Shown one piece after another: positions 17,471 through 64,000 of a stretch of DNA of 64,000 nucleotides (the first letter of the stretch is position 1; each line of letters begins with the position of its first letter). The notes beneath the pieces were generated by a model. The model saw only the letters and a program-made list of their open reading frames with translations, searched no databases and was not told where the DNA came from. The stretch covers positions 434,001 through 498,000 of the forward strand of contig JANJGN010000189.1 of the NCBI GenBank assembly GCA_026770705.1, given 5' to 3'. The DNA comes from Isurus oxyrinchus. Taxonomy: Eukaryota. The position numbers and the translations under genes were made by a program.

Positions 17471-17479
17471 CCTAAATCA

Positions 17480-28226: not shown

Positions 28227-28861
28227 TCAGCTTGCTGAGGAGAAGAAGGAGAATCTCTCGTTCCAGGTTTCTCTCCGTACATTAAGAAGCAGACATGCCG
28301 ATGTTTCATTACACTCTGTCTGCTGATGGGAGTCCGCTTGGAAATTGCTGTTTGTGCTGATGGAAAGAATAAGCTTTTCATAAATCGAGGGATTGAGTAC
28401 AAACACAGGGAGGTTGCCATTAGCTGATGGGACAAGGACTGGGGGACACAGATTGAAGGTTTTGGGCAGAGGGGGGATTTGAGGAGGAACTTTTTTACAC
28501 AGCGAGTGGTAATGAGCTGGAACTCGCTGCCTACGAGGATGGTGGAAGCGGAGACGATGAACGATTTCAAAAGGAAATTGGATGGACACTTGAGGGGAAA
28601 TAACCTTGCAGGGATACGGGGATAGAGCGGGGGAATGGGACTGACTGGATTGCTTTACAGAGAGACAGCATGGAGTCGATGGGCCGAATGCCGTTCTTCT
28701 GTTCCATGATGAGATTGTTGCTGTGCAAAGCTTTAAACTTCCTTTCACTGTTTGCCTCTCCCAGACACAGACTCCAGTGATAGTGATAACCACAGCCACA
28801 AGGAATATCACAGCTCGTATTCCCAGGATCAGGATCACGTGCAGAATCTCTCCTCCACTGT
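28227..28861 (-). pseudogene. Unit A: Arg-containing TM exon with read-through tail, SGGEILHVILILGIRAVIFLVAVVITITGVCVWERQTVKGS...
   Basis: ttctctag acceptor; near-identical to 41384-41523, but an 11-nt deletion takes the stop out of frame and extends the ORF to 28227. Confidence 0.75.
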
Positions 28862-30530
28862 CTAGAGAACACACAGAAAGAAATCATCACTGACTCTCCG
28901 CTTTCAATCTCTCACTCTGGCTGAACAATCAAGCTTCATATCACTGCAACATTTGCTGTAATATTGACCCATCCACTGGGATTCAATGTGGAATGAATGT
29001 TTTCATTGTAAACACTCTAAGAGTGGACAATCGGAACTTTCCCCTTAGCGTGGAACATTGGTGAGAATGGATCATTGTGCTGTTGGACTCCCTGTCCAAT
29101 GTTTCTCTCCATCGCTGTGTACAGGATTGTGCTGTAGAAAATTCTGGAAACGTTTAGTGCAGGGTGGAAATCCATCTCGGACGCGTGTGCGAATCGGGCA
29201 GGATCAAGATGGACTCGCCTTCGGACTTACACCCCCCGCTTAATAAACAGTTCCAATCTTTACCCAGAGAGAGGGGAGAATGTGGAACTCGCTCCCACTG
29301 GGAGTGTGTGATGTGAACAGTATCGATGTATTTAAGGGGCAGGAGGGTCGGTAACCAGAGGGACACAGATTGATGAACCGGAGGGGGAGATGAGGAGAAT
29401 TTGTTTTGACAGAGCGAGTTGTTGTGATCTGGAAGGTGCTGCCTGAAAGGGCAGTGGAAGCAGATTCAATAGGAACTTTCAAAAGGGAAATTGGATAAAC
29501 ACTTGAAGGAGGAAGATGGGGGCAAAGTGGAGTGGTCGTTAGTGGATCTGATGGGATAGAACATTGAAATACCTGGCACAGGCTCAATGGGCTGAATGGC
29601 CTCCTCCTGTGCTGTATCATTCTCCACTTCCATGATCTCTCCCCCAGTCAGTAACCACTCCAGATCCCTCTTGAAGGTGACAGAGAAACAGCAACCACCA
29701 CACCCACTGACAGCACATTCCCGAGGATCACTACTCTCTGGGAAAAGATGAACTCCCCAACATCCAGCCTATTCCTGCTTCCCGGAGAGTGTAAACCCTT
29801 CAGGGATGCGCTGAGGAAGTTTTCAATAAAATGACATCAAATCTACCGTTGGAGAAATAATTGAATTCCGATGAACTCACAGCTTGTGTAGCAAACTGGG
29901 AAGTAGAGTTGCTGGGAAAGCTGGGAAACACAAGGATGAAGGGCTACAATGCCACCACTGATTGGAGGCTGTAACTACAGCGTGACGTTTACATAGGCAG
30001 TCATCAGTATAAACAGGGGCATTGCACATAATGGGAATTATGTGCACGGAAATAGTGAGAACATTATTTAAGCTTTTCACCAGCAGGAATTCTCTTCCTA
30101 AACCTCTCCAACTCTCTCTTACTCTCAGATACACAAAGAAAATCACACAGAATCAGATAAGGAAGAATTAGGTTGGTGATTCGTCAAAGGGTTAGGTTTC
30201 AGGAAGCTTCTTAAAGGGAGAGAGAGAGTTGGAGATGCAGAGAGTATCTGTGAGTGTCTCTATGCATCTGAGTGTCTGTAATAGTAATTTCCATATTCTT
30301 CCATAAATATGAATGGGAACACAAATCCCAGAATTCAGGCCAACTCTCCAGTGCAGTACTGAGGGAGGTCAGGTAACCCATGAGGGAGTGAGTGTTATTG
30401 TTTGTGTGTGAGTGTGTCTTTGTGTGTGGTCATATATGTGTGTCTGCACGTGTCTATTTAGGTGTGTATGTTCGATGGTGTTTGTGTAGTGTTCAAATCT
30501 GAGAGAGATGTTGAAGTCTGTGTAACTCAC

Positions 30531-30684
30531 GTTCCACAGTGATGGTTATGAACCCATCCACTGCTCCATGTTCTTTCTCTGCCACACACTGATAGTCTCC
30601 AGTGTCCCTGGATGTAACATGAGGAGTCACCAACCACAGCTCATTGTTGGAACTTGTTCTGTTCATTTGGACATTCAGATGTCA
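30531..30684 (-). pseudogene. Unit A: 3' half of a C2-set (type b) exon, acceptor lost
   Basis: NRTSSNNELWLV...GDYQCVAE homology; donor intact; 5' half replaced by unrelated sequence. Confidence 0.8.
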
Positions 30685-31006
30685 TGGCAGGAATCAAGAA
30701 GCCCGTTCACAGGATTACCAACAGAAAGTGAACAACAGTTTATACTTAATGGGAAGAGAGTGCTGATTGGTTGGCAAGTGGTCTCTGATAGGTGGAGGTG
30801 TTGCCATGGAGAATGGTGTGTGTGAGATGTAAAGTTTAGACAGCTTGTCTCTTCATTCAGCAATAATCAAATAAAGATCAATTAACTTCTATCGACATTG
30901 AAGCACTTAGAGAGGCCTTAGAATGTGGATACTGAGAACGGGCTGCACTGTCAGAGGGTCAGCGCTGAGGGAGTGCTGATGTAGAATGAAGGGTGTATGT
31001 AATTAC

Positions 31007-31303
31007 CTTGCACAGTTAGTACGAGGGTCCGCTCCGATGAAACAGATGGATATCTCACTCTGCAGCTGAGAGTGTGTCCGTGGTGTTTGAGTGATGGGAT
31101 CAGGGTCAGAACAGAAGTATAGGTCAGAGTGACACCATGCTGAGATACAGTGTTTGAGACTGATCCAGGTACGTCAGTGGGAGTGTCCCAGGTTAAGACA
31201 GGTGCTGCTGTTCCATTGCATGTTGTGTTGAAGGTGCAGCTTACATCCACACGCTTTCCTGCAATAATTTCAGCAGGGAATATCGTGGGTTTATCTGTGA
31301 AAT
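31007..31303 (-). pseudogene. Unit A: C2-set (type a) exon, open reading frame
   Basis: 297 nt, phase 1-1, FTDKPTIFPAE...SCTFNTTC...LSCRVRYP...LTVQ; extra Cys typical of Siglec domain 2. Confidence 0.88.
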
Positions 31304-32160
31304 CTAACAGACAGAGAATGGATCCTTTTAGAGAAATATAACGTGAAGCATCAGTTCAAATAGAAATCACAGTCCCACAAGAGAAAGCACTTTTACAAGG
31401 ATGATATCAGAACTGAGAGGTTACAATGATCAGGAAAGATTTTCTTGCTCTTTGGCAGTAGTGTTTCTGTCTCTCAGCTTAATACACGTTCACTCCGAGA
31501 CATGTGAATTGAGAACACTGGATGAGAGAAGAGGCTCAGACCAGAAATTGGAGTTAAAAGCAGAATACTGCGGATGCTGGAAATCTGAAACCAAAAGAAA
31601 AATTGCTGGAAAGACTCAGCAGGTCTGACAGTATCAGTGGAGAGGAAGACAGGGTTAACGTTTCGAGTCCGTATGACTCTTCATCAGACCAGAGGTTTGA
31701 GTTCACTGGCTTCTCATTTCCTCAATGATCTAGGTGATTTATTACATTGCGTTTGTTGGATCTTGCTGTGCACAAACTGCCTGCTGTGTTTTACATCTGT
31801 GACTACAATTCAGGAATAATTTCATTGGCTGTGAAGGGATTTGGATCCTCCTGAGGTGGTAAATTGCGCTGCAGAAATGCACATCTTTCTTTTATCGATA
31901 AGTCAGACTTTTAAACAGGACAGGAGAGATTGATGGGTGTGGATAACCTGATAATGCTGTTAATGCTTTTCATCATCGATATAAAGTGAGTATTAGACGT
32001 TGCTTTAGGACTGAACTGGAAACGATCACCAGGTTATTGAGAATCAGACAGTGTGTTATAATAAGCTGTGTTTTGTGTTAATATGTAAACGTCACAGTTT
32101 GTGTTATTTCCCATTGATTGTTGAATGTGAATTGTTGAGTAATTATAACACAGCACTTAC

Positions 32161-32527
32161 CACAAAAGTGAAGCTGGTTTACATGGTAATAGTTATGGCT
32201 CGACCATTGTCAAATTCTATTCTTATAAATAAGGTCCTGCATCTTCCCGTCTGATGTTGTTTATCATCAGGGAACAGTCGCCATCTTTCAGGTCTCCAGA
32301 CAGCCGGGTCCGATGGTGGAACCGTGGTAACTCGTGACTGTGATCCTTGGAGTGAAAGGCAATGGGAGCCCAGGGAATCTGTTTCTCATTATTAAACCAG
32401 ACTCCACCTCGCAGTTGGCTTTCCAAATGTGATGGATAACTGTAATGACATGGAATCTGTGCACAGAAACCTTCCTGCGCTGCCACCTCTCGTGGAGTGT
32501 CACCTTTCCACTCTTGTGACATTCCAA
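32161..32527 (-). pseudogene. Unit A: V-set exon with two 1-nt deletions and a premature TAA just before the essential Arg
   Basis: 367 nt versus 369 nt in unit C; reads GPYL-stop where paralogs read GPYFFR / GFFFFR. Confidence 0.9.
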
Positions 32528-33388
32528 CTGGGGAGAGAAATATCAATATTTAACTCTGGATGGTTTGTAGATCCAATAGACTCGATATCCACCCCCTCCA
32601 TCACTGGGGCACAGTGGCTGCAGTGTGGACCATCTACAGGACACACAGGGATCTCCTCAAGGTTTCACAATGGATGGAAGAGAATCCTGGTCACAGGAGT
32701 GGACAAGTTCATTCTACATTGGCTCATGGTCCTCAGGACCCTGTTTAGTGAAGCCAGTCTTCCACCCAACACAGTGTCTACAAGATACACAGGGAAACTG
32801 TGTAAATATCTCATCTCTCTACACCGACTGGTTTGTCTTCGGTTTAACTTTCAGTTATTTTACTTCCTTATTGTGGTTGCTATGGTGAAACTGTGCAGGA
32901 AGTGCGAGGGCTGGACTCTCTGTCTATTCTGACTGCAGCTGTGATGTGGTCGTGGTGATTCTCAGTAAAATGAAACCCTCTGATCTCCCCCATCCCCGAG
33001 GTTTAGGGAGTGAATTCCAGAGCTCAGGCCCCAGGCAGCAGAAGGCCCGGCCGCCAGTATTGGAGTGATGGGAATCGGGGGATGGTCAAGAGGCCGGACT
33101 TGGAGTAACACAGAGATCTGGGACTTTGGTTGGGAGAGTTGCAGGAGGTTACAGAGATAAGGACGCAGTGTGAGGCAATGGATGCATTTGAACAAAGAGA
33201 TGTGACTTTTAAGTTTGAGATGTTGTAGGACCAGGAGACAGATAGTTTAGGGGTGATGGGTGAATGGGACTTGGTGTGAGCTTGTACACTGGCTCACTGC
33301 TGAATCGGTTCCCAATAACAGCTCAATAAGAATGATCTTTTACAAAGGCTATTAACCATAAATCTGTCCGAGCTGACGATGATATTAC

Positions 33389-33428
33389 CTTGGAGAAGTG
33401 ACAGGAGGAAGTAAGATTTTCCAATCAT
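33389..33428 (-). pseudogene. Unit A: leader exon MIGKSYFLLSLLQ (intact)
   Basis: ATG at 33428, CAAG|gtaata donor, phase 1. Confidence 0.85.
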
Positions 33429-33881: not shown

Positions 33882-34022
33882 CCAGGACCTGTCCGACTGC
33901 TCGCCTGGGGAGGAACTGCCCACACGCTCTGCTTGGGCTGAATGACCTCTTCCTGTGCTGCTCCCTCTGTGTGTTTAATGAGAAAGGGTGGATGTGTCAC
34001 TTTGAGACAAAATGAGGAAGTT
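33882..34022 (-). promoter_or_regulatory. Unit A: non-coding exon 1 and promoter with PU.1/ETS-like box
   Basis: TGG|gtaagt donor; block conserved at 39230, 52194 and 56079; AAAATGAGGAAGT motif upstream. Confidence 0.6.
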
Positions 34023-34975
34023 GGTTCAAAGTGACAGAGCAGCTCATGTTTTGAGATGTTGGTGAACTGTTAACCCTTTGTGTCCTGACCCTGTGTTGAT
34101 ATTTCTGCTCACAGGTGCACAGTCATTGACCAGGAGTTTCTCCTGTGGGTCAGTGGGTTTCACACCCGAACTCAGGGAGTCAGTATGTTTTAGAATTTTG
34201 TGGGGTTCAAGACCCCATTCAGCAGATGCCTGCCCCACAGAGTAGACTGAAATTCCCCAGTGTCAGTACTGAGGGAGTGCTGCACTGTCAGTGGGTCAGT
34301 ACTGAGGGAGTGCTACACTGTCAGAGGAACAGTACTGAGGGAGTGCAGCACTGTCGGAGGGTCAGTACTGAGGGAGTGCTACACTGTCAGAGGGACAGTA
34401 CTGAGGGAGTGCTGCACTGTCAGAGGGACAGTATCGAGGGAGTGCTAATCTGTCGGAGAGACAGTTTTGAGGGAGTGTTGCATTGTCAGAGGGACAGTAC
34501 TGAGGAATTGTTGCGCTGTTGGAGCGTCAGTACTGATGGAGTGCTGCACTGTCGGTGGGACAGTCCTCAGGGAGTGCCGCACTGTCGGAGGGTCAGTACT
34601 GAGGGAATGTTGTACTGTTGGAGGTTCAGTACTGAAAGTGCGCTGCACTGTCGGAGGGTCAGTACTGAGGGAGTGTTGTACTGTCAGAGGTTCAGTATTG
34701 AGTGAGTGCTGCACTGTCAGAGGGTCAGTACTGAGGGAGTGCTGCACTGTCAGGGGGTGAGTACATTGAGATTCCTGCTCTGCTCTATCAGCCCCTTGGC
34801 TGGACATAAAAGCCGCTGTGTTAATGTTCAGAAACGGTTATTAATTGTATTCTGGTCACCATTTTCCCTCAAAGACAGATTATCTGATTGTCATCAGAAT
34901 ACCTTTCTATGGGATCCTGCTGAGCGTAATCTTGACTGTTCCAGCGAATGTATAATGAAGGGTGTCCGTTCTTAC

Positions 34976-35272
34976 CTTGCACAGTTAGTATGAGGGTCTG
35001 CTCCGATGAAACAGATGGATATCTCACTCTGCAGCAGAGAGTGTGTCCGTGGTGTTTGAGTGATGGGATCAGGGTCAGAACAGAAGTATAGGTCAGAGTG
35101 ACACCATGCTGAGTTACAGTGTTTGAGACTGATCCAGGTACGTCAGTGGGAATGTCCCAGGATAAGACAGGTGCTGCTGTTCCATTGCACGTTGTGTCGA
35201 AGGTGCAGCTTACATCCACAGGCTTTCCTGCAATAATTTCAGCAGGGAATATCGTGGGTTTATCTGTGAAAT
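34976..35272 (-). pseudogene. Unit B: C2-set (type a) exon; no TM exon follows in this unit
   Basis: 297 nt, canonical splice sites, several substitutions (e.g. LCCRV). Confidence 0.85.
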
Positions 35273-35515: not shown

Positions 35516-36560
35516 TGTGATGAAACTATGATATTTTTCAGAATAATATTGTCGGCTTATGGGAATGAATGTAGATGGTTCCGTCTGCGGGTCTGATTTA
35601 ATTGAATTCGAGTCAGATCAACTGTGAGGTTAAAACTATCAATAGAGTTTGGTGCAAAGCAGACTTCTGAAATGGGGATGGACAAGCTAGGATGAGGGTT
35701 CCACAGAAAAGCTGTAAATGAAATTTTAGATCAGTAAAGAGAATGTTTGATTGTCAAAGGGTAGTTGGGTGTTTATAATTAACAAGATAACCAGGGCAAG
35801 GTTATTATGTGTATTCTTCCCAAAAGGAATGGGCCATATTGACAACATGAAAGATTTTTATACTATGGGAAAAGTGTATTTCCCAAGACAGGTGCAACAA
35901 TGGGATTTTATACATTGGAGAGAGAGAAACCAACATAAAGAAGGATGGAATGTTATGTGGGAGGGGGACATGAATTTCTTGAAAGGTACAGTAGGTGAAG
36001 ACAGGTGCTGCTGTTCCATTGCACGTTGTGTTGAAGGTGCAGCTTACATCTACACGCTTGCCTGCAATAATTTCAGCAGGGAATATCGTGGGTTGATCTG
36101 TGAAATCTAACAGACAGGGAATGGATCCTTTTAGGTAAAACGTTTCTGTTCACTTTTGCTGCTCCAGTGCTTATAGGTGTGTTAAAAGACTTTGGAATTA
36201 TACTGTCAAGTGGGTGCTGCAGTAACCTTGCCGGATTCCCATTTCCATTTAAGATTTATTGGGATTGTTGCCTTCAAGGGGGTGTGTAGTTGGAAATTAG
36301 GTTAATGAGAAATTTTGGAATTTGTTCTAATATCAAGTAACTGTAATCTTCTGTATGTGTTTGAATGTTTCTTCTTTTGTTAATACATTTCTTAATATAA
36401 TTTTAAAATATCTAAAGGTGTTAGTGGACTCAATTCTTATGCATTCACATCATAAGCCTTCTCTCAACAAATGTAAATGGCAAAACCATTGTGGTAGCTT
36501 GGCCAAGTTCCCTTTGTGGATTCTCTCCACCTGGCACACATCACCTGCCATGTCATAACA
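35516..36560 (+). mobile_element. Solo LTR in the unit B V-C2 intron, containing a Siglec C2 exon fragment
   Basis: TGTGATGA...TCATAACA termini, 4-bp TSD atgt/gtgt, empty site in unit A (~32070). Confidence 0.75.
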
Positions 36561-36645: not shown

Positions 36646-37010
36646 CAGAAACTTGAAGCTGGGTTACAGGGTAATAGTTATGGCTTGGACCATTGTCAAA
36701 TTTTATTCTGAAAAAATAAGGTCCTGCATCTTCCCATCTGATGTTGTTTATAATCAGTGAACAGTCACCATCTTTCAGGTCTCCAGACAGCCGGGTCCGA
36801 TGCCGGAACAGTGGTAACTCGTGACTGTGATCCTTGGAGTGAAAGGCTATAAAGAATCTTATCAGGACTTTGTCATTAAACCAGATTCCAATTTGTGGTT
36901 GGTTTTCCAGACACGATGGATAACTGTAATGACATGGAATCTGTACACACGAATATTCCTGCGCTGTCACCTCTCATGGAGTGTCACCTTCCACTCTTGT
37001 GACAGTCCAA
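36646..37010 (-). pseudogene. Unit B: V-set exon with an early 1-nt deletion and CGA>TGA
   Basis: SCVQIPC...GDCSL...GPYFFRIK retained, but the 5' end is out of frame relative to units A and C. Confidence 0.9.
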
Positions 37011-38106
37011 CTGGGGAGAGAAATATCAATATTTAACTCTGGATGGTTTGTAGATCCACTAGACTCGATATCCACCCCCTCCATCACTGGGGCACAGTGG
37101 CTGCAGTGTGGACCATCTACAGGACACACAGGGATCTCCCCAATGTATCACAATGGATAGAAGAGAATCCTGGACACAGGAGTGGACAAGTTCATTCTAC
37201 ATTGGCTCATAGTCCTCAGGACCCTGTTTAGTGAAGCCAGTCTTCCACCCAACACAGTGTCTACAAGATACACAGGGAAACTGTGTAAATATCTCATCTC
37301 TCTACACTGACGGTTTACCTTTCAGTTAATTCATTTCGTTATGGTGAAACTGTGCAAGAAGTGTGAGGGCTGGACCCTCTGTCTATTCTGAATGCTGCTG
37401 TGATGTAATCATGGCCTCTCAGGGAATGGACTTTTGGAGTTAATTCATCCCTGAATTTTGATTTTGAATTCCAGAGCTCGGGGCCCAGGCAGCTGAAGGC
37501 ACGGCCGCCAATAATGGAATGATGGGAATCGGGGGATGGTCAAGATGCTGGAATTGGAGGAGTGCAGAGATCTCGGAGGGTTGTAGGTACTGGAGGAGAT
37601 TACAGAAATAGGGAGGGTTGTAATGGTGGACGAGGTTACAGAGAAAGGGAGGTTTGTAGGGGCTGGAGAAATTAACAGAGATAGCGAAGGATATAGGGGC
37701 TGGAGTTGGTTAAAGAGTTAGGGAGAGTGGTAGGGGCTGGAGGAGGTTACTGAAATAGGGAGGATTGTAGGAGCAGGGCAAGGTTACAGAGGTAGGGAGT
37801 AATATATGTGCTGGAAGATGTTACAGAGATAGGGAGGTTGGTATGGGCTGGAGGAGGTAACATGGATAGGGAGAGTTGCAAAATTTTGGAGGGATTTCTA
37901 CAGGATGACCTGGATTTTAATTTTCTGTTGCTGTCAGACAGGGAGTCAGTGAATATCAGTGATCACAGGGGTGATGGGTGAATGGGACTTGGTGTGAGTT
38001 TGTACACTGGCTCACTGCTGAATCGGTTCCCAATCACAGCTCAATAAGAATGATCTTTTACAAAGACTATTAACCATAAATCTGTCCGAGCTGACGATGA
38101 TATTAG

Positions 38107-38138
38107 CTTGGAGAACTGACAGGAGGAAGTAAGATCAT
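38107..38138 (-). pseudogene. Unit B: dead leader exon
   Basis: 8-nt deletion and donor GT>CT relative to 51704-51743. Confidence 0.85.
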
Positions 38139-38257
38139 TGTCCATTCCCAGATATTTCATCAGCTTCTCACTCTCAAGCTGTGAAAGAGAAAGGAGTTAA
38201 TGAGACCTCACCTCTTGTCCGACAGCTCTCCAGAGATCAGAACTGCTTTTAGACAAT

Positions 38258-39229: not shown

Positions 39230-39372
39230 CCAGGACCTGTCCGACTGCTCGCCTGGGGAGGAACTGCCCACACGCTCTGCTTGGGCTGAATGACCTCTTC
39301 CTGTGCTGGCCCCTCTGTGTGTTTAATGAGAAAGGGTTGATGTGTCTCTGTGAGACAAAATGGGGAAGTAGT
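39230..39372 (-). promoter_or_regulatory. Unit B: non-coding exon 1 and promoter
   Basis: Paralog of 33882-34022; AAAATGGGGAAGT motif. Confidence 0.55.
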
Positions 39373-41260: not shown

Positions 41261-41383
41261 CACTGTGCTGGAATGCCTCTCTGATACGAAGGTGATTCTA
41301 ACCAGGACACTGACCCACAACTTAACCCAACATCACACGTTATTTGTCCGCACTGACTGACCAGATTGTTGCTGTACAAAGCT

Positions 41384-41523
41384 TCAAACAGTCTGTCGAC
41401 TTCCTTTCACTGTTTGTCTCTCCCAGACACAGACTCCAGCGATAGTGATAACCACAGCCACAAGGAATATCACAGCTCGTATTCCCAGGATCAGGATCAC
41501 GTGCAGAATCTCTCCTCCACTGT
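41384..41523 (-). CDS. Unit C: TM and short tail, (D)SGGEILHVILILGIRAVIFLVAVVITIAGVCVWERQTVKGSRQTV-stop; activating-type
   Basis: Canonical acceptor, phase 1, Arg codon at 41477-41479 inside the hydrophobic helix, 12-residue tail without Tyr. Confidence 0.85.
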
Positions 41524-42642: not shown

Positions 42643-42796
42643 GTTCCACAGTGATGGTTATGGACACCTCCACTGCTCCATGTTCATTCTCTGCCACACA
42701 CTGATAGTCTCCAGTGTCCCTGGATGTAACGTGAGGAATCACCAACCACAGCTCATTGTTGGAACTTGTTCTGTTCATTGTGACATTGAGATGTCA
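42643..42796 (-). pseudogene. Unit C: 5'-truncated C2-set (type b) exon remnant, presumably skipped
   Basis: Same breakpoint as 30531-30684; no acceptor. Confidence 0.8.
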
Positions 42797-43118: not shown

Positions 43119-43415
43119 CTTGCACAGTTAGTACGAGGGTCCGCTCCGATGAAACAGATGGATATCTCACTCTGCAGCTGAGATTGTGTCCGTGGTGTTT
43201 GAGTGATGGGATCAGGGTCAGAACAGAAGTATAGGTCAGAGTGACACCATGCTGAGTTACAGTGTTTGAGACTGATCCAGGTACGTCAGTGGGAGTGTCC
43301 CAGGTTAAGACAGGTGCTGCTGTTCCATTGCACGTTGTGTTGAAGGTGCAGCTTACATCCACACGCTTTCCTGCAATAATTTCAGCAGGGAATATCGTGG
43401 GTTTATCTGTGAAAT
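43119..43415 (-). CDS. Unit C: C2-set exon
   Basis: 297 nt, cag acceptor and gtaagt donor, open, phase 1-1. Confidence 0.9.
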
Positions 43416-45137: not shown

Positions 45138-45506
45138 CAGAAACGTGAAGCTGGGTTACAGGGTAATAGTTGTGGCTCCGACCATTGTCAAATTCTATTC
45201 TGAAAAAAAAAAATCCTGCATCTCCCCATCTGATGTTGTTTATAATCAGGGAACAGTCGCCATCTTTCAGGTCTCCAGACAGCCGGGTCCGATGGTGGAA
45301 CCGTGGTAAATCGTGACTGTGATCCTTGGAGTGAAAGGCTATAGACGATGTATTCCATTTGTCCCTCCTCATATTCCAGATTCCGACACGTGCTTTCTCT
45401 AACAAATGTGATGGGTAATTGTAATGACATGGAATCTGTACACATGAACCTTTCTGTGCTGTCACCTCTCGTGGAGTGTTACTTTCCCATTCTTGTGACA
45501 GTCCAA
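45138..45506 (-). CDS. Unit C: intact Siglec V-set exon with essential Arg (FFFRIE, codon 45199-45201)
   Basis: 369 nt, open, phase 1-1; A-strand Trp, SCVQIPC, GDCSL, no F-strand Cys. Confidence 0.92.
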
Positions 45507-51703: not shown

Positions 51704-51743
51704 CTTGGAGAAGTGACAGGAGGAAGTAAGATTTCCCGATCAT
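51704..51743 (-). CDS. Unit C: leader exon MIGKSYFLLSLLQ
   Basis: ATG at 51743, gtaata donor, phase 1; acceptor at 51786-51787. Confidence 0.87.
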
Positions 51744-52193: not shown

Positions 52194-52336
52194 CCAGGAC
52201 CTGTCCGACTGCTCGCCTGGGGAGGAACTGCCCACACGCTCTGCTTGGGCTGAATGACCTCTTCCTGTGCTGCTCCCTCTGTGTGTTTAAATAGAAAGGG
52301 TTGATGTGTCACTGTGAGACAAAATGAGGAAGTGGT
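52194..52336 (-). promoter_or_regulatory. Unit C: non-coding exon 1, TATA-like TATTTAAA and PU.1-like box AAAATGAGGAAGTG
   Basis: gtaagt donor at 52193; block conserved in four copies. Confidence 0.62.
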
Positions 52337-52449
52337 TAGTCCCAAGTTAGAAAGCATCTCTTTGCCTCGCACAGTTAGAAAACTGTTAACCCTTTGTGTG
52401 CCAAGAATGTGGCTGAAGGGCCATCGACTGTTCACATGCTTTAAGCTCG

Positions 52450-53160
52450 AGGTGGTTGAACGGACCTCCTCCTGTTCCTGTGTAACAGGCTTGAGGGGCT
52501 GAATGGACCTCCTCGTGTTCCTGTGCAAGAGGCTTGTGTGGCTGAATGGGCCTCCTCCTGCTCCTGTAAAACTGCCTCGAGGGACTGAATGAACCTCCTC
52601 CTCTGCTTCTTGTGTAACAGCCTTGAGGGGCTGTTTGGGCCCCCTCATGTTCTTATATAAGATGCTCGTGTGGCTGAATGAGACTTCTCCTGTTCCTATG
52701 TAACTGACTTGAGGGGCTTAATGGACCTCCTCCTGTTCCTGTTCATCAAGCTCATGGGGCTGAAATGACCTCATTCCGTTCTGGTGTTAGAGGCTTGAAG
52801 GTCTGAATGGGCCTCCTCCTGTTGCTGTGTAACAGGCTCGAGGGGCTGAATGGGCCTCCTCCTGTTCCTGTGTAACAGGCTCGAGGGGCTGAATGGGCAT
52901 CCTCCTGTTCCTGTGTAACAGGCTCGAGGGGGCTGAATGGGCTTCCTCCTGTTCCTGTGTAACAGGCTTGAGGGGCTGAATGGGCTTCCTCCTGTTCCTG
53001 TGTAACAGGCTTGAGGGGCTGAAAGGCCTCCTCCTTTTCCTGTATAACAGGCTCATGGGGCTGAATGGCCTCCTCCTGTTCCTGTGTAACAGGCTCGAGG
53101 GGGCTGAATGGCCTCCTCCTGTTCCTGTGTAACAGGGTCGCGGGGCTGAATGTCCTCCTC
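52450..53160 (-). repeat. ~42-bp minisatellite (same family as 14735-15230)
   Basis: Tandem ggctgaatggcctcctcctgttcctgtgtaacaggctcgaggg units. Confidence 0.85.
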
Positions 53161-54496: not shown

Positions 54497-54613
54497 TTAT
54501 AAATTCCCATAAACAGAATCCTTGGCAAATTCACAGTTTGCGTAAAGATCATCATCTGTATCAGGATTGACTCCGCGGTTAGATTTCATTTCCAGATCCT
54601 TCTCATCTTTCTT
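54497..54613 (-). CDS. Unit D: putative terminal cytoplasmic exon, KKDEKDLEMKSNRGVNPDTDDDLYANCEFAKDSVYGNL-stop
   Basis: tttctattacag acceptor, phase 0, two Tyr motifs preceded by acidic residues, TAA stop. Confidence 0.75.
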   Translation of the reverse strand, partial: KKDEKDLEMKSNRGVNPDTDDDLYANCEFAKDSVYGNL

Positions 54614-54711
54614 CTGTAATAGAAACAGAAATGATCAGAGTGACAATCAGAGTGATCAGTGTTTAGTATTATTGATCCAAATCGAAAATTCCACCCACAA
54701 TGGATACATTA

Positions 54712-55330
54712 ATTATTGATACTGAACAGGGTTTGATTATTGATACTGAACGGGGTTTGATTATTGATTCTGAACGGGGTTTGATTATTGATTCTGAACG
54801 GGATTTGATTATTGATACTGAACGAGGTTTGATTATTGATTCTGAACAGGGTTTGATTATTGATTCTGAACGGGGTTTGATAATTGATACTGAACGGGGT
54901 TTGATTATTGATTCTGAACAGGGTTTGATTATTGATTCTGAACGGGGTTTGATAATTGATACTGAACGGGGTTTGATTATTGATTCTGAACGGGGTTTGA
55001 TTATTGATACTGAACGGGGTTTGTTTATTGATACTGATCGGGGTTTGATTATTGATACTGAACGGGGTTTGATTATTGATACTGAACGGGGTTTGCTTAT
55101 TGATATTGAATGGGGTTTGATTATTGATACTGAATGGGGTTTGATTATTGATTCTGAACGGGGTTTGATTATTGATACTGAATGGGGTTTGATTATTGAT
55201 TCTGAACGGGGTTTGATTATTGATACTGAACGGGGTTTGATTATTGATACTGAACGAGGTTTGATTATTGATTCTGAACGGGGTTTGATTATTGATTCTG
55301 ATCGGGGTTTGATTATTGATTCTGAACGGT
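54712..55330. repeat. 24-bp minisatellite (gattattgatactgaacggggttt), about 26 copies, intronic
   Basis: Highly homogeneous tandem units; explains the GLIIDTER and SIIKPRSE ORFs. Confidence 0.95.
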
Positions 55331-55491
55331 GTTGGGTGTGAGTTTGGTTGGGTTTGGGAGTGACTGTATAAAACATTGCAGATACAGGACTGGAGCAGCC
55401 ATATCAATAACCAGGCTACTGGAGCAGCTGAGAGGCTGGGGATCCTGTGGTGTGTGAGTCACCCGATTCCTCAAAGCCCAACCACGCTCAC

Positions 55492-55914: not shown

Positions 55915-56310
55915 GAAAGATGTTCTGTACAACAGACTTGAGCCTCACACCCAGATCTCAATAATCAGTAGAAATCTTTCAAAGGCATCAATCATTGGAA
56001 TCTGTCTTTATAAAGTCACAACATCAACAAAGGACGGTGTTGGTCATGGAAGTGAATTCCAATCGTTCCGTTACTTACCCAGGACCTGTCCGACTGCTCG
56101 CCTGGGGAGGAACTGCCCACACGCTCTGCTTGGGCTGAATGACCTCTTCCTGTGCTGCTCCCTCTGTGTATTTAATGAGAAAGGGTTGATGTGTCTCTGT
56201 GAGACAAAATGAGGAATTGGGGAACAATTGTGAAAACCCTTTCATTGAAACGTAGGGCCTTAGTGTTGTGCTGTAAACAAACTGTTAACCCTTTGTGTCC
56301 TGACTCTGTG
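55915..56310 (-). promoter_or_regulatory. Orphan copy of the Siglec promoter/exon-1 module inside a unit D intron
   Basis: Near-identical to 39065-39370 and 52030-52330; donor at 56078; no leader exon directly follows. Confidence 0.65.
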
Positions 56311-56921: not shown

Positions 56922-57018
56922 TTTCTCACACACTTGAAGATGAAGAATCCACTCAGTCCAACACTCAAACAGATTCCAGCTCCAAACAATCCTGCTTTCC
57001 ATTCATTGGAATCTCGCC
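56922..57018 (-). CDS. Unit D: TM exon, RDSNEWKAGLFGAGICLSVGLSGFFIFKCVRK (uncharged core)
   Basis: ttttacag / gtaagt; 97 nt, phase 1 to 2; clear paralog of 386-482. Confidence 0.87.
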
Positions 57019-58282: not shown

Positions 58283-58564
58283 GTTCCACAGTGATGGTTA
58301 TAAATCCCTCCACTGCTCCATGTTCATTCTCTGCCGCACACTGATAGTGTCCCGTGTCCCTGGATGTAACGTGAGGAATCACCAACCACAGCTCATTGTT
58401 GGAACTTGTTCTGTTCATTGGGACATTAAGATGTCACCACATCAGGTTAGAAGCTGGGAAGCTTTCGACAGAGCAGATTATCACTGCAGCATTTCCCTCA
58501 ATTATATTGATCGATGAAGCGTTAATCATATCAAGAGAAGTAATTGATGGGTTCCGTGGTGCAT
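58283..58564 (-). pseudogene. Unit D: inactivated membrane-proximal C2-set (type b) exon
   Basis: 282 nt; CGA>TGA at 58434-58436 and donor GT>AT at 58281-58282. Confidence 0.88.
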
Positions 58565-59622
58565 CTAAATACAAATAAAGGTTTCATTGTCAGCAAACAC
58601 AGTGCACAGCAAGACTCCATGATACATCTCTCTCTATTTGGTGTCTATGTGCATTTCAAGAGTTCTTTCCTGTTTTAAGTTCCTATGTCAACTTTTATAA
58701 TGGTCACTGCCGGTGTTTTTCTTTTTGCACATTCATGGGAAGTGGATGTATCTATCTAGACCAGCATTTATTACCCATCCCTAATTGCCCTTGAGGAGGT
58801 GGTGGTGATTTTTCACACCCACAGAATTCCCAGCCTCTGACCTGCTCCTGTAGCCACAGTATTTATGGCCGGTCCAGTTAGTAGTTTGGTTAACATCCCC
58901 CAGGATGTTGATTGTGGGGGATTCAGTGATAGTAAACTCACTGAACATCAAGGGGAGATGGTTAGATTCTCTCTTGTTGGACATGATCACTGCCTGGTAA
59001 TTGTGATGCATTAATTGTCTCAGCCCAAGCTGAGTGTTATTCAGCTCTTGCTGCATGTGGATATGTAAACTGTCATGCTGTAATTACAGCCATCTACCAG
59101 AGGAGACACTGTCGGTCTAGAAGAAAAGAAAATGTCTTTCACATCATCAGGATGTTCACAGGGATTTGACAGTGGAGGAATTGCTTTAGAATAATGGGGT
59201 ATTGAGTGATAAACCTACAATTCTCTGTGCAGGGGGCTGCTCGTCCAATACAGGGTCTTGTTCAGCTGATGTCGTCAGTGTTTCAGAGCAGAATCTGGAG
59301 CAACACTCCAGTGCAGCACAGGGAGAACAGACAACTCACACATGTCTGTGTGTGTGTGAGCAAGCACACGTGTGATTCTGTGTATGTTTCCTTCTGTGTG
59401 TGTGCATGCAGGTGTACACACCTGTGCACATGTGGGATTGCGNNNNNNNNNNNNNNNNNNNNNNNNNNNNNNNNNNNNNNNNNNNNNNNNNNNNNNNNNN
59501 NNNNNNNNNNNNNNNNNNNNNNNNNNNNNNNNNNNNNNNNNNNNNNNNNNNNNNNNNNNNNNNNNNNNNNNNNNNNNNNNNNNNNNNNNNNNNNNNNNNN
59601 NNNNNNNNNNNNNNNNNNNNAC

Positions 59623-59904
59623 ATTCCACAGTGATGGTTCTGAATCCCTCCACTGCTCCATGTTCATTCTCTGCCACACACTGATAGTCTCCAGTGTCCC
59701 TGGATGTAACGTGAGGAATCACCAACCACAGCTCATTGTTGGAACTTGTTCTGTTCATTGGGACATTAAGATGTCGCCACGTCAGGTTAGAAGCTGGGAA
59801 GCTCTCGACAGAGCAGATTATCACTGCAGAATTCTCCTCAATTATATTGATCGATGAAGCATTAATCATTTCAAGAGAAGTAAATGAGAGATCCTGTGGT
59901 GAAT
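59623..59904 (-). CDS. Unit D: C2-set (type b) exon
   Basis: 282 nt, open, phase 1-1, SPQDLSF...IICSVESFPASNLTW...GDYQCVAENEHG. Confidence 0.88.
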
Positions 59905-60736
59905 CTAAGAACAAATCAAGTGTTTAAAAGTGAGCAAGCTAAGTGCACAGCAAGACTTCATGCATCATCTCTCTGTATCTGATGTCCGAATGCATTTCCA
60001 GATAACTTCCCTCAGTATAAGGTCTTATGGCACATTTATAATTGACACTGCTTATGTAAACTGTCACACTGCAGTTGCATTCTCCCACCAGTAGAGGTGT
60101 TGCCCATCTAGAATGAAAGAAGTTTGCTTTCACATCCTCAGGATTTCGCAAAGGGCTTGACAGGCAATGTTTGATTGAGGGAGCACTGAGGGGTAAATCT
60201 ACAATTCTCTGTTCAGGAGGTTGCTCATCCAATTCAGGGTCTTGCTGATCTGGAGTTTACCGTCCTTCAACACAGAATCGGAGCTGATACCGAGACTCCA
60301 GTGCAGCACTGAGAACTCTCGCGTGTGTATGTGTGTGTTTGTGTTACTGCACATGTGAGTGTGTTTGTGTGTGTATGCACACATGTAGCTGTGTGTGCGC
60401 ATGCACGCGTGTCTGTGTGTCTACGTCTGTACATGAGTGAGAGTACGTGTATGTGTGTGTCTATGTGTGGGCATGAATATGTGTGTGTGTTTGAGATGGG
60501 TGTGTATTTTCCTGTGTATGTGTTTGTATGTATATGACTGTCTGTGTATACTTANNNNNNNNNNNNNNNNNNNNNNNNNNNNNNNNNNNNNNNNNNNNNN
60601 NNNNNNNNNNNNNNNNNNNNNNNNNNNNNNNNNNNNNNNNNNNNNNNNNNNNNNNNNNNNNNNNNNNNNNNNNNNNNNNNNNNNNNNNNNNNNNNNNNNN
60701 NNNNNNNNNNNNNNNNNNNNNNNNNNNNNNNNNNAC

Positions 60737-61018
60737 ATTCCACAGTGATGGTTATGAACCCCTCCACTGCTCCATGTTCATTCTCTGCCACACACTGATA
60801 GTCTCCAGTGTCCCTGGATGTAACGTGAGGAATCACCAACCACAGCTCATTGCTGGAACTTGTTCTGTTCATTGGGACATTAAGATGTCGCCACGTCAGG
60901 TTAGAAGCTGGGAAGCTCTCGACAGAGCAGATTATCACTGCAGAATTCCCCTCAATTATATTGATCGATGAAGCATTAATCATATCAAGAGAAGTAATTG
61001 AGAGATTCTGTGGAGCAT
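60737..61018 (-). CDS. Unit D: C2-set (type b) exon
   Basis: 282 nt, open, canonical acceptor, GT donor abutting an N gap. Confidence 0.88.
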
Positions 61019-61766
61019 CTAAAAATAAATAAAGATTTTAATGTGAGCAAGCATAGTGCACAGCAAGCCTCCATGCATCATCTCTCTGTATCTGATGTTG
61101 GAATGCATTTCCAGGTACCTTCCCTCAGGAAAAAGTACTGTCACATTTATAATGGGCACTTCCTATGTAAACTGTCACACTGCAGTGGCATTCTCCCACC
61201 AGTGGAGTTGCTGTCCATCTAGAATGAAAGAAACATCCTTTAACACTCTCAAGATGCCCCCAAGAGATTGAAAGCCCGTGAATTGTATTTGATTGATGGA
61301 GCACTGAGGGGTAAATCTACAATTCTCCGTTCAGGAAGTTGCTCATCCAATTCAGGGTCTTGCTGATCTGGAGTTTACCTTCCTTCAACACAGAAACAGA
61401 GCTGATACCAAGACTCCAGTGCAGCACTGAGAGAGGAGAGGGATCTCACACTTGTGTGTGTGTGTGTGTATTTCTGCACAAGTGAGTTTGTATTTGTGTG
61501 TATGCGCGTGTCTGTCTGCGCATGTGTGGGCACGCGTGTGTATGTGGGTCTTGTGTGTACATCTGTGCTTGAGTGAGTGTGTGTGTATACGTGTGTCTAC
61601 GTGTGCGCATGAATGATTGTATGTGTGAGTTGAGTTTGTGTGTGTTTCTGTGTATGTGTTTGAACGTATGTTTGTGTGTAAGCGTGCTTGTTTGTGTCTA
61701 CACATGAGTGTTTTTGCATGTGTGTGTGTGTTTGTGTGTGTGATGTTGAAGTCTGTGTACACTCAC

Positions 61767-62048
61767 ATTCCACAGTGATGGTTATGAACCCTTCCACTGC
61801 TCCATGTTCATTCTCTGCCACACACTGATAGTCTCCAGTGTCCCTGGATGTAACGTGAGGAATCACCAACCACAGCTCATTGTTGGAACTTGTTCTTTTC
61901 ATTGGGACATTAAGATGTCGCCACGTCAGGTTAGAAGCTGGGAAGCTCTCGACAGAGCAGATTATCACTGCAGAATTCCCCTCAATTATATTGATCGATG
62001 AAGCATAAATCATACCAAGAGAAATAATTGAGACATTCTGTGGAGCAT
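61767..62048 (-). CDS. Unit D: C2-set (type b) exon
   Basis: 282 nt, open, tag acceptor and gtgagt donor. Confidence 0.9.
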
Positions 62049-62724
62049 CTAAAAACATATAAAGATTTTAATGTGAGCAAATATAGTGCACAGCAAGACT
62101 CCATGCATCATGTCTCTGTATCTGATGTCTGAATGCATTTCCAGATACCTTCTCTCAGGATAAGAACTTATTTCACATTTACAATGGGCACTGCCTATGT
62201 AAACTGTCACACTGCAGTTACATTCTCCCACCAGTGGAGGTGTCCATCTAGAATGCAGGAAACTCCCTTTCAGATCCTCAGGATGTCCCCAAGGGCTTCA
62301 AAGGCAATGAATTGTATTTGACCAATGGCGCACTGAGGGGTAAATCTACAATTCACTGTTCAGGAGGTTGCTCCAGCCAGTTCAGTGTCTTGATGATCGG
62401 GAGTTTACCTTTCATCAACAAAGATTCGGAGCTGATACTGAGACTCCAGTGCAGCACTGGGAGAGGAGAGGGAACCCACATGTTTTTGTGTGTGTATGTG
62501 TGTGTTGGCTTGTGTGTGTATGTTTCTGTAAAATAAGGATCTGTGTGTGTGCACGCACTCATGTGTGTTTGTTTGTGTGNNNNNNNNNNNNNNNNNNNNN
62601 NNNNNNNNNNNNNNNNNNNNNNNNNNNNNNNNNNNNNNNNNNNNNNNNNNNNNNNNNNNNNNNNNNNNNNNNNNNNNNNNNNNNNNNNNNNNNNNNNNNN
62701 NNNNNNNNNNNNNNNNNNNNNNAC

Positions 62725-62817
62725 ATTCCACAGTGATGGTTATGAACCCCTCAATTATATTGATCGATGAAGCATTAATCATATCAAGCGAAGTAAATGA
62801 GAGATTCTGTGGTGCAT
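62725..62817 (-). CDS. Unit D: internally deleted C2b exon (93 nt), APQNLSFTSLDMINASSINIIEGFITITVE, a putative linker
   Basis: In-frame 189-nt deletion between two GAGGGG repeats; splice sites retained. Confidence 0.7.
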
Positions 62818-63069
62818 CTAAGAACAATTAAAGATTTCATTGTGAACAAGACTCAGTACTGAGGGAGTGCTGCACTGTCAGAGGATCAGTACTGAGGGAG
62901 TGCTGCAGTGTTGGAGAGTCAGTGTTCAGGGACTGCTGCAGTGTCAGAGGTGAATTTGTATCAGTTAAAGACTATTGATTTGTTGCTAAACACAATGCAG
63001 TTGTGGGATCTTGCAATATACTATGTAGAGCTTTCTAGCTAATGTAGATGGAAGGGTGTCCGTTCTTAC

Positions 63070-63366
63070 CTTGCACAGTTAGTACGAGGGTCCGCTCCGA
63101 TGAAACAGATGCATATCTCACTCTGCAGCTGAGAGTGTGTCCGTGGTGTTTGAGTGATGGGATCAGGGTCAGAACAGAAGTATAGGTCAGAGTGACACCA
63201 TGCTGAGTTACAGTGTTTGAGACTGATCCACGTACGTCAGTGGGAGTGTCCCAGGTTAAGACAGGTGCTGCTGTTCCATTGCACGTTGTGTTGAAGGTGC
63301 AGCTTACATCCACACGCTTTCCTGCAATAATTTCAGCAGGGAATATCGTGGGTTTATCTGTGAAAT
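63070..63366 (-). CDS. Unit D: C2-set (type a) exon; V exon lies beyond the window end
   Basis: 297 nt, open; nearly identical to 31007-31303 and 43119-43415. Confidence 0.9.
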
Positions 63367-64000
63367 CTAACAGACAGAGAATGGATCCTTTTAGAGAAAT
63401 ATAACGTGAAGCATCAGTTCAAATAGAAATCACAGTCCCACAAGAGAAAGCACTTTTACAAGGATGATATCAGAACTGAGAGGTTACAATGATCAGGAAA
63501 GATTTTCTTGCTCTTTGGCAGTAGTGTTTCTGTCTCTCAGCTAAATACACGTTCACTCCGAGACATGTGAATTGAGAACACTGGATGAGAGAAGAGGCTC
63601 AGACCAGAGATTGGAGTTAAAAGCAGAATACTGTGGATGCTGGAAATCTGAAACAAAAACAAAAATTGCTGGAAAGACTCAGCAGGTCTGACAGTATCAG
63701 TGGAGAGGAAGACAGGGTTAACGTTTCGAGTCCGTATGACTCTTCATCAGACCAGAGGTTTGAGTTCACTGGCTTCTCATTTCCTCAGTGATCTGGGTGA
63801 TTTATTACATTGTGGTTTGTTGAATCTTGCTGTGCACAAACTGCCTGCTGTGTTTAACATCTGTGACTACAATTCAGGAATAATTTCGTTGGCTGTGAAG
63901 GGATTTGGATCCTCCTGAGGTGGTAAATTGCGCTGCAGAAATGCACATCTTTCTTTTATCGATACGTCAGACTTTTAAACAGGACAGGAGAGATTGATGG

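What the first reader, a model, noticed from the sequence alone, without database searches (positions are those of the whole stretch)
28227..64000. Paired activating/inhibitory Siglec-like receptor system
Seen: near-identical C2a ectodomain exons (31007, 34976, 43119, 63070) are linked to two unrelated membrane modules. Units A and C use an Arg-containing TM with a Tyr-free 12-aa tail (stop intact in C). Unit D uses an uncharged TM with Tyr-motif exons, and that TM is paralogous to the TM of the ITIM/ITSM gene at 386-2737. Established: this is the logic of the human Siglec-5/14 and Siglec-11/16 pairs, where a basic TM residue recruits an ITAM adaptor. Inference: an independently evolved or very ancient paired-Siglec system in a probable cartilaginous fish.
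Basis: partly seen in the sequence, partly recalled or inferred. Interest (0 to 1): 0.88.

Follow-up and report, generated by a model that had tools for sequence, protein, structure and literature searches.

The report
Shark Siglec-like receptor cluster, one intact activator
This stretch of a shark genome holds a cluster of Siglec-type immune receptor genes in which the same outer-domain exon is joined to different signalling ends, but only one 'activating' copy is intact and transcribed, two copies are dead, and the family is already predicted in public shark annotations.

Summary
On the minus strand lies a tandem cluster of Siglec-family genes from an elasmobranch. The nearest proteins are great white shark RefSeq models.

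- **Shared exon:** the four C2a exons are 97-99% identical, inside a homogenised block of about 400 bp.
- **Unit C:** an intact four-exon, 281-codon gene (leader, V with the Siglec arginine, C2a, Arg-TM plus a 12-aa Tyr-free tail).
- **Units A and B:** both are pseudogenes. A has two frameshifts in V and an 11-nt deletion that removes the stop. B has a broken leader, a frameshifted V and no TM.
- **Unit D:** incomplete, since its V lies beyond the window. Its three N gaps are all intronic. Its tail (DLYANC...SVYGNL-stop) differs from the ITIM+ITSM tail of the plus-strand gene at 386-2737.
- **Pairing:** V exons are only 84-87% alike, so same-ligand pairing is not shown.

The family, including Arg-TM forms, is already in RefSeq for many sharks and rays. 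This scan found it before on other pieces of this genome. I found no paper on it. The hepcidin neighbour matches the human HAMP-MAG-CD22 order.

The parts
51704..51743 (-). Unit C leader exon (MIGKSYFLLSLLQ, phase-1 donor)
   Evidence: It is homologous to the leaders of A and B. It is the same N-terminus as the shark RefSeq models P0003, P0008 and P0012. Its splice to the V exon was not tested with reads.
45138..45506 (-). Unit C V-set exon (369 nt), Siglec type with FFFRIE arginine
   Evidence: Pfam V-set and Ig_CD22. Best PDB sequence hits are sialoadhesin, Siglec-5 and MAG. AlphaFold2 model has pLDDT 92, and nearly all of the 40 highest-ranked Foldseek rows shown are Siglec V domains. RNA joint 45138>43415.
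43119..43415 (-). Unit C C2a exon (297 nt) with CTFNTTC motif
   Evidence: Pfam C2-set_2. PDB hits are domain 2 of MAG, CD33, Siglec-10 and Siglec-5. Canonical splice sites. RNA joints on both sides.
42643..42793 (-). Unit C remnant: 3' half of a C2b-type exon, no usable acceptor, donor intact
   Evidence: In run X5 the donor at 42643 is joined to the TM acceptor at 41523.
41384..41523 (-). Unit C Arg-TM exon with 12-aa tail and stop; closes a 281-codon frame
   Evidence: RNA joint 43119>41523 in runs X1, X2 and X6. It is 91-96% identical to great white shark models P0180 and P0183.
33389..33428 (-). Unit A leader exon (intact)
32161..32527 (-). Unit A V exon, two 1-nt deletions (reads ...DAGPYL-stop)
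31007..31303 (-). Unit A C2a exon
30531..30681 (-). Unit A half C2b remnant
28730..28861 (-). Unit A Arg-TM exon; an 11-nt deletion removes the stop
36646..37010 (-). Unit B V exon, 1-nt deletion near its 5' end
   Evidence: The B leader (about 38043-38195) has a 9-nt deletion and a GT>CT donor.
34976..35272 (-). Unit B C2a exon; no TM exon follows; an extra C2a fragment lies at 35985-36116
63070..63366 (-). Unit D C2a exon; the upstream intron is 96-100% identical to that of A up to the window end
58283..62817 (-). Unit D tandem array of C2b-type exons: r1 62725-62817 (93-nt remnant); r2 61767-62048, r3 60737-61018 and r4 59623-59904 (282 nt each, intact); r5 58283-58564 (stop codon, donor GT>AT). 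The three N gaps lie in its introns.
   Evidence: Pfam Ig_3/I-set.
56922..57018 (-). Unit D uncharged TM exon (97 nt, same length as exon 386-482)
   Evidence: It is 93% identical to P0012.
56079..56163 (-). Unit D cytoplasmic exon 2
54497..54613 (-). Unit D last exon: ...NPDTDDDLYANCEFAKDSVYGNL-stop
   Evidence: Homologous tails are found in P0007 and P0012.
386..2737 (+). 3' end of a plus-strand family member: TM exon 386-482, cytoplasmic exon 1361-1442, last exon 2489-2737 with LFYANI (ITIM) and TEYTQI (ITSM)
   Evidence: It matches the tail of P0003.

Best explanation
This is a birth-and-death cluster of elasmobranch Siglec-family receptor genes in the hepcidin neighbourhood. The genes are built from exchangeable exon cassettes. 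A Siglec-type V exon and a C2a exon (plus 0-5 C2b exons) are joined to one of three membrane/tail modules:
1. An Arg-containing TM with a 12-aa tail.
2. An uncharged TM with an ITIM+ITSM tail (the plus-strand gene).
3. A paralogous uncharged TM with a Y-x-N / ITIM-like tail (unit D).

Shown:
- Unit C is an intact, transcribed V-C2a-ArgTM gene.
- A and B are decayed copies of the same tandem unit.
- A block of about 400 bp around the C2a exon is homogenised among all four units.
- Unit A is a mosaic. It is like D upstream of C2a and like C downstream.

Inferred:
- The V domain binds sialylated glycans through the conserved arginine.
- The TM arginine pairs with an acidic residue of an ITAM adaptor (DAP12- or FcR-gamma-type) and gives an activating signal.
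- The ITIM/ITSM tail recruits SHP-type phosphatases.
- The tail of D may recruit SHP and/or Grb2.
- Recombination and gene conversion next to the C2a exon move heads between signalling ends.
For: - Siglec identity of V and C2a.
- Unit C frame of 846 nt (281 codons) over four exons with canonical splice sites.
- Splice joints 45138>43415 and 43119>41523 with GT..AG ends in runs X1, X2 and X6, with depth peaking on exons.
- The same V-C2a-'VQ D SGGE...'-ArgTM architecture appears in RefSeq models of Scyliorhinus torazame, S. canicula and Carcharodon carcharias.
- Three tail modules across the family.
- Lesions in A and B.
- Mosaic and homogenised block.
- Hepcidin exon. Human order USF2-HAMP-MAG-CD22: (PMC3847609).
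Against: - No binding or signalling was tested. No adaptor sequence was examined.
- The runs are only guessed to be RNA. The joint-bearing contigs have short sides (18-31 nt) and could come from close paralogues rather than from unit C itself.
- V exons are diversified (84-87% identical in DNA), so opposite signalling from the same ligand is not shown.
- The V exon of D and the Ig exons of the plus-strand gene are outside the window.
- The leader-to-V splice of unit C spans 6.2 kb and was not tested.
- The two 1-nt deletions in the V exon of A could in principle be assembly errors.
Confidence: 0.72

Rival explanations
1. The span holds no true activating/inhibitory pair. Unit D is not inhibitory: its tail is a Grb2-type (pY-x-N) or endocytic tail. 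The family is then better described as one head family with several signalling outputs, with the canonical inhibitory form only outside the finding's span (386-2737).
For: The D-type tail conserves Y-x-N in three species (YGN, YVN, YGN). The ITIM -2 position varies (S, P, A). The upstream motif has C/W at Y+3. No ITIM/ITSM exon homologue lies downstream of D.
Against: In unit D itself SVYGNL fits the ITIM consensus [SIVL]xYxx[IVL]. Many ray relatives end in S-I-Y-x-N-[IV]. Motifs that bind both kinds of partner may exist (my recollection, not checked here).
Confidence: 0.3
2. The Arg-TM forms do not signal. They are tailless decoys or decaying by-products of exon shuffling, as the loss of A and B suggests.
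For: Two of the three Arg-type units here are broken. A cryptic half exon is still spliced in some transcripts (run X5).
Against: The cassette, with its arginine and its exact tail end, is conserved between catsharks, bamboo shark and great white shark. Unit C is intact and its spliced form is abundant in contigs.
Confidence: 0.1
3. The repeated units are assembly artefacts (collapsed or falsely duplicated copies).
For: Three gaps lie in the tandem C2b exon array of D. r1 is an odd in-frame remnant next to a gap.
Against: A, B and C differ by 6-16% outside the homogenised block and carry different lesions and insertions. Contigs from independent runs cover unit C with few differences.
Confidence: 0.05

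Closest known systems
Predicted shark Siglec-like proteins in RefSeq, such as Carcharodon carcharias XP_041037180.1 (P0012), P0180 and P0183, and Scyliorhinus torazame XP_072325011.1 (P0083)
   Same: They have the same exons and the same exon junctions. C2a is 88-95% identical and the Arg-TM 91-96% identical. The D-type TM is 93% identical, and the tails are the same.
   Different: They are automatic models named by best hit (Siglec-12, -13, -14, CD33-like). I found no published analysis of them. None of those I saw is identical to a unit of this window.
Human paired Siglecs: Siglec-5/Siglec-14 and Siglec-11/Siglec-16
   Same: These are Siglec heads on either an ITIM/ITSM tail or a TM with a basic residue and a short tail. 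Ectodomain exons are kept alike by gene conversion. The activating partner is often lost. All of this is my knowledge of the human pairs.
   Different: Here the homogenised piece is the C2a exon and its borders, not V plus C2. V exons are only 84-87% alike. The Arg-TM cassette was not compared with the human TMs. There are three tail modules, not two.
CD33 (Siglec-3) and other CD33-related Siglecs
   Same: Unit C has the two-domain V-C2 head. The plus-strand gene ends with an ITIM, then an ITSM-like motif near the C-terminus (LFYANINF...TEYTQIRF). This recalls the LxYAxLxF...TEYSEI tails of that group; the mammalian model P0039 ends ELHYASFIF...TEYSEIKIRR.
   Different: The neighbour is hepcidin, as for MAG/CD22 in human, not the 19q13.4 cluster. 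Orthology was not tested. Bony fish are reported to lack this subgroup (PMC7226832).
MAG (Siglec-4) and CD22 (Siglec-2)
   Same: They are linked to hepcidin (human order USF2-HAMP-MAG-CD22). Like unit D, they have several C2-type domains. MAG is among the best sequence and fold matches for V, C2a and the r-type exons.
   Different: Identity is only 24-40%. There are many recent paralogues here, with Arg-TM variants. The tails differ.
Other paired receptor families (KIR, LILR/PIR, teleost NITR/LITR)
   Same: They show birth-and-death tandem clusters, exon shuffling between inhibitory tails and charged-TM short-tail forms, and frequent pseudogenes.
   Different: They use different Ig domain types and different ligands. 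They have no Siglec-type V domain.

Membership tests
Siglec family (I-type lectins) | N-terminal V-set domain of the Siglec fold | tested here: met
   Unit C V exon: best PDB sequence hits are sialoadhesin, Siglec-5, MAG, Siglec-8 and CD33 (E 4e-10 to 5e-8). The AlphaFold2 model has pLDDT 92.2. Nearly all of the 40 highest-ranked Foldseek rows shown are Siglec V domains, TM-score about 0.8-0.88.
Siglec family (I-type lectins) | Conserved arginine on strand F that binds the sialic acid carboxylate | tested here: met
   FFFRIE in unit C aligns with YNFRFE of sialoadhesin and YFFRVE of Siglec-5. In unit B's V exon the motif reads YFFRIK, downstream of that exon's frameshift. In A the motif is frameshifted. 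The arginine is present in nearly all family V domains.
Siglec family (I-type lectins) | Unusual cysteine pattern: C..(I/V)PC in strand B, DCSL in strand E, and an extra cysteine in domain 2 for an interdomain bond | tested here: met
   SCVQIPC and GDCSLII in V, and CTFNTTC in C2a, aligned with the VSCMVPDNC motif of MAG domain 2. Only the sequence pattern was seen. The bonds themselves are not shown.
Siglec family (I-type lectins) | Sialic-acid-dependent ligand binding | not testable with these tools
   This needs Fc fusions, glycan arrays and an arginine mutant.
CD33-related Siglec subgroup | Membrane-proximal ITIM plus membrane-distal ITSM-like motif | tested here: inconclusive
   Met by the plus-strand gene (LFYANI, TEYTQI). 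Not met by unit D (DLYANC, SVYGNL). Units A and C have no Tyr.
CD33-related Siglec subgroup | Orthology or synteny with the mammalian CD33-related cluster | tested here: inconclusive
   The only informative neighbour is hepcidin, which in human lies beside MAG and CD22. No phylogeny was made.
Paired activating/inhibitory receptors (Siglec-5/14 type) | Basic residue inside the TM, with a short tail without signalling motifs | tested here: met
   ...ILILGIRAVIFLV... plus ERQTVKGSRQTV-stop in unit C. The same is found in P0006, P0083, P0180 and P0183.
Paired activating/inhibitory receptors (Siglec-5/14 type) | The charged-TM exon is really spliced to the Ig exons | tested here: met
   Joint 43119>41523 with GT..AG ends in runs X1, X2 and X6 (two studies). 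Joint 45138>43415 in the same runs. Caveat: these are contigs with short sides, and paralogues are possible.
Paired activating/inhibitory receptors (Siglec-5/14 type) | Partner genes share a nearly identical ligand-binding domain | tested here: inconclusive
   C2a is 97-99% identical in all units, but the V exons of A, B and C are 84-87% identical. The V of D is outside the window. The A-D identity of 96-100% runs to within about 225 bp of where the V exon of A lies, so an A/D pair is possible. The great white shark models P0012 and P0183 are about 64% identical in V (my count from the alignment).
Paired activating/inhibitory receptors (Siglec-5/14 type) | Association of the charged TM with an ITAM adaptor | not testable with these tools
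It needs co-immunoprecipitation.

The most novel reading that the evidence does not exclude
The shark cluster sits at the ancestral Siglec locus (the hepcidin-MAG-CD22 neighbourhood). It already combines CD33-type ITIM/ITSM tails with charged-TM partners. If so, CD33-related-type Siglecs and the paired activating/inhibitory logic date back to the jawed-vertebrate ancestor and were lost in teleosts, rather than being a tetrapod or mammalian invention.
Probability: 0.25. Interest if true: 0.75.

Novelty: new member of a known kind. Interest (0 to 1): 0.5.

Why it matters
Published work on fish Siglecs states that fish genomes lack CD33-related, ITIM-bearing Siglecs (PMC7226832). Sharks and rays carry a large, recently shuffled Siglec-type family with ITIM/ITSM tails, Y-x-N tails and charged-TM versions. 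This locus shows that the charged-TM form is spliced and expressed.

This gives a second, very distant vertebrate lineage in which to ask two questions. How are paired lectin receptors made? Here the answer appears to be recombination and conversion beside the C2a exon. Are they driven by pathogens that exploit inhibitory Siglecs?

The hepcidin linkage gives a concrete synteny anchor for dating the family. The claim is tempered. The genes are already in automatic annotations. The scan met the family before on other pieces of this genome. In this window only one activating copy is alive.

Tried and rejected
1. I looked for a homologue of the ITIM/ITSM last exon downstream of unit D with tblastn. 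None was found. A motif scan then found the different D tail.
2. I tried to read the C2b-like piece of A and C as a coding exon. Its 5' half is unrelated sequence with stops, and no AG lies between the last stop and the conserved half. It is a remnant.
3. I checked whether the N gaps interrupt exons. They do not.
4. A Pfam scan of long ORFs in the 6.2-kb first intron of unit C, and of other ORFs, found nothing except a LINE reverse-transcriptase fragment at 3864-4361.
5. Literature searches for shark or elasmobranch Siglecs and for shark DAP12 found no relevant paper.
6. I considered a V-domain tree to decide 'ancient or independent' and did not make one. The references at hand lacked named CD22, Siglec-15 and human CD33-related sequences, and 120 residues would not resolve it.
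8. I did not send a joined spliced protein of unit C to any search. Exons were searched one by one by reference, and the 281-codon length was obtained by adding exon lengths.
9. Reads were laid only on 40800-46600. Unit D, unit A and the leader-to-V splice of unit C were therefore not tested with reads.


Full report
**Layout.** The window has seven runs of N. Three of them lie in the finding's span. The genes of the finding are all on the minus strand. ORF listing, repeat finding and a self-comparison show four related units:
- A: about 28.7-33.4 kb.
- B: 34.9-38.2 kb.
- C: 41.4-51.7 kb.
- D: from 54.5 kb to beyond the window end.

The 3' end of a fifth family member lies on the plus strand at 386-2737.

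**The gaps, tested first.** Unit D holds a tandem array, with a period of 1.0-1.3 kb, of five C2-type exons (r1-r5).
- Aligned on each other, the gaps at 62580-62722, 60555-60734 and 59443-59620 all begin at the same homologous place. That place is the third base of the intron, right after the GT that follows exons r1, r3 and r4.
- On their far side the sequence resumes in the same CA-rich low-complexity intron that the ungapped copy r2 shows in full.
- So no exon and no reading frame crosses a gap.
- What stays unknown is the rest of three donor sites and the true number of repeats in the array.

**The observation.**
- They are 97.0-99.0% identical.
- The Arg-containing TM exon occurs only in A and C. 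It has no similarity to the uncharged TM exon of D.
- The TM exon of D (56922-57018) has the same length (97 nt) as exon 386-482 of the plus-strand gene. It is 68% identical to it in protein (tblastn E 1e-13) and 76% in DNA.
- The plus-strand gene ends with LFYANI and TEYTQI, an ITIM and an ITSM.
- Unit D has no copy of that exon. Instead two in-frame exons follow its TM, and the last ends ...DLYANCEFAKDSVYGNL-stop.
- The same three-exon tail is found in models from great white shark and bamboo shark.

**State of the units.** Unit C is intact.
- Its exons are leader (ATG at 51743), V (45138-45506), C2a (43119-43415) and Arg-TM (41384-41523).
- All four have canonical splice sites. Their lengths add up to 846 nt, or 281 codons.

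Unit A is broken.
- Its V exon has two separate 1-nt deletions. The first falls in the YFFR motif and gives a stop.
- An 11-nt deletion in its TM exon removes the stop codon.

Unit B is also broken.
- Its leader has a 9-nt deletion and a GT>CT donor.
- Its V exon has a 1-nt deletion near the start.
- It has a stray C2a fragment and no TM exon at all.

A and C keep only the 3' half of a C2b-type exon. The 5' half is replaced by unrelated sequence with stops, but the donor is intact.

In unit D:
- r2, r3 and r4 are intact 282-nt phase-1 exons.
- r1 is a 93-nt in-frame remnant.
- r5 has an in-frame stop and a GT>AT donor.
- The V exon of D lies beyond base 64000.

**Transcription.** One read-laying run was allowed, and I spent it on unit C (40800-46600).
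- Contigs of runs X1 and X2 (one sample) and X6 (another study, another organism label) carry the joint 43119>41523. That is C2a straight onto the Arg-TM exon.
- The same runs carry the joint 45138>43415, V onto C2a.
- Both joints have GT..AG ends on the minus strand and sit at exactly the predicted exon borders.
- Summed contig depth peaks on the exons.
- Run X5 shows the half-C2b donor (42643) joined to the same TM acceptor.
- Contigs run through the stop codon of unit C into the 3' flank.

Caveats:
- The runs are only guessed to be RNA, although spliced joints argue that they are.
- The shorter side of the joint contigs is 18-31 nt.
- At 95% likeness, close paralogues elsewhere in the genome could be the source.

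**What the exons are.**
- The V exon matches Pfam V-set and Ig_CD22.
- Its best solved relatives by sequence are sialoadhesin, Siglec-5, MAG, Siglec-8 and CD33. The F-strand arginine is aligned with theirs.
- An AlphaFold2 model has pLDDT 92. Nearly all of the 40 highest-ranked Foldseek rows shown are Siglec V domains.
- C2a matches domain 2 of MAG, CD33, Siglec-10 and Siglec-5, including the extra cysteine.
- The r exons are generic I-set domains, with MAG domain 4 among the best hits.
- The arginine and the cysteine pattern are kept across the family.

**Relatives.** A full HMMER search with the V exon gave 926 hits.
- The closest are RefSeq models from many sharks and rays. They are named Siglec-8, -10, -12, -13, -14, CD33-like or MAG-like.
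- They show three C-terminal modules: ITIM+ITSM, Arg-TM with the same ...TVKGSRQTV end, and the D-type tail.
- A search with the Arg-TM part alone found two-domain Arg-TM models in Scyliorhinus torazame, S. canicula and Carcharodon carcharias. They have the very junction predicted for unit C (...TVQ-D-SGGE...). They are 91-96% identical to unit C in the TM and 88-95% in C2a.
- The window therefore comes from a shark close to, or the same as, the great white shark.
- The architecture is already present in automatic annotation.
- This scan also met the family before on other pieces of this genome (s1-300785, s1-300793).

**How the units relate.** A sliding comparison shows the following:
- A block of about 400 bp (the C2a exon, about 75 bp of intron before it and about 30 bp after) is 97-100% identical in all four units.
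- Upstream of it, A equals D (96-100%, up to the window end) but not C (41-86%).
- Downstream of it, A equals C (86-94%) but not D.
- So A is a mosaic with a breakpoint just 3' of C2a.
- The few differences inside the exon are mostly amino-acid changing, while the adjoining intron is identical. This fits recent conversion or recombination better than selection on the protein alone.
- This agrees with note s1-869098.

In contrast, the V exons of A, B and C are only 84-87% identical. A great white shark D-type model and an Arg-TM model, on a contig of equal recorded length, are about 64% identical in V and about 88% in C2a (my counts from the alignment). The defining feature of a strict receptor pair, a shared ligand-binding domain, is therefore not shown here. 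The best candidate pair is D with the dead unit A.

**Context.** A hepcidin last exon lies at 20588-20758 on the plus strand (Pfam E 4e-7). In human the gene order is USF2, HAMP, MAG, CD22 (gene list in PMC3847609). A paper on fish Siglecs states that fish genomes lack CD33-related Siglecs (PMC7226832). I found no paper on shark Siglec pairs.

**Mechanism.**
- Shown: the exon anatomy, the splicing of the Arg-TM form, the decay of A and B, and the mosaic.
- Inferred from established knowledge of Siglecs and paired receptors: sialoglycan binding through the arginine; pairing of the TM arginine with an acidic residue of an ITAM adaptor; and phosphatase recruitment by ITIM/ITSM.
- The tail of D is ambiguous. 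SVYGNL fits the ITIM consensus, but the feature conserved across species is Y-x-N, which is also a Grb2-type motif.

**Verdict.** This is a real, expressed member of a shark Siglec-type family with activating-type and Tyr-tail versions, found here in a locus that is largely decayed. It is a new member of a known kind, not a new kind.

Noticed in passing
window 20588-20758 (+), gene about 16.2-20.8 kb: Hepcidin-like last exon: RQKR cleavage site, then an 8-Cys peptide (Pfam Hepcidin, E 4e-7). Hepcidin next to Siglec-type genes mirrors the human order USF2-HAMP-MAG-CD22.
   Followed up: partly
window 52194-52274, 39230-39310, 33882-33962 (-): Three orphan, apparently intact copies (with splice sites) of cytoplasmic exon 2 of unit D. 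Each lies roughly 0.45-1.1 kb upstream of the leader exon of C, B or A. The tandem unit seems to have been cut out of a D-type gene tail.
   Followed up: partly
window 13011-13373 (+): A divergent V-set exon (CVVIPCSF, NCSV motifs; Pfam V-set E 2e-5, just below the cut-off). It is 30-35% identical to the family V exons. The open frame ends where the arginine motif should be.
   Followed up: no
window 42643-42906 (-), run X5: A 674-nt contig joins the donor of the dead half-C2b exon to the Arg-TM acceptor and carries the stop-rich sequence upstream of it. This is a cryptic-exon or intron-retaining isoform, or a paralogue about 95% alike.
   Followed up: no
window 43119-43120 (-), runs X2 and X6: Loose ends show C2a-like exons spliced to an exon that is not in this window. 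Paralogues elsewhere use yet another exon after C2a.
   Followed up: partly
window 1572-2036, 27001-27794, 34146-34782, 39535-39967; also 54569-55468, 16365-17588, 37562-37936, 14733-15229, 52432-53160: Several minisatellite arrays (33-, 24-, 37- and 43-nt units) recur between the genes. The 33-mer array follows the Arg-TM exon in A and C, and follows C2a directly in B. This marks the deletion that removed the TM of B.
   Followed up: partly
window 45100-45500, 36650-37010, 32160-32530 (-): Differences between the three V exons are concentrated in one stretch (HLLEKARVGIWNMRRDKWNTSS in unit C), with indels there. The rest of the exon is conserved.
   Followed up: no
window 3864-4361 (+) and 24012-24369: LINE-type reverse transcriptase fragment (Pfam RVT_1, E 1e-6) with an 87% identical copy 20 kb away.
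   Followed up: no
window 45507-51703: The first intron of unit C is 6.2 kb, against about 0.9-1.1 kb in A and B. The extra DNA holds long ORFs without a Pfam match.
   Followed up: partly
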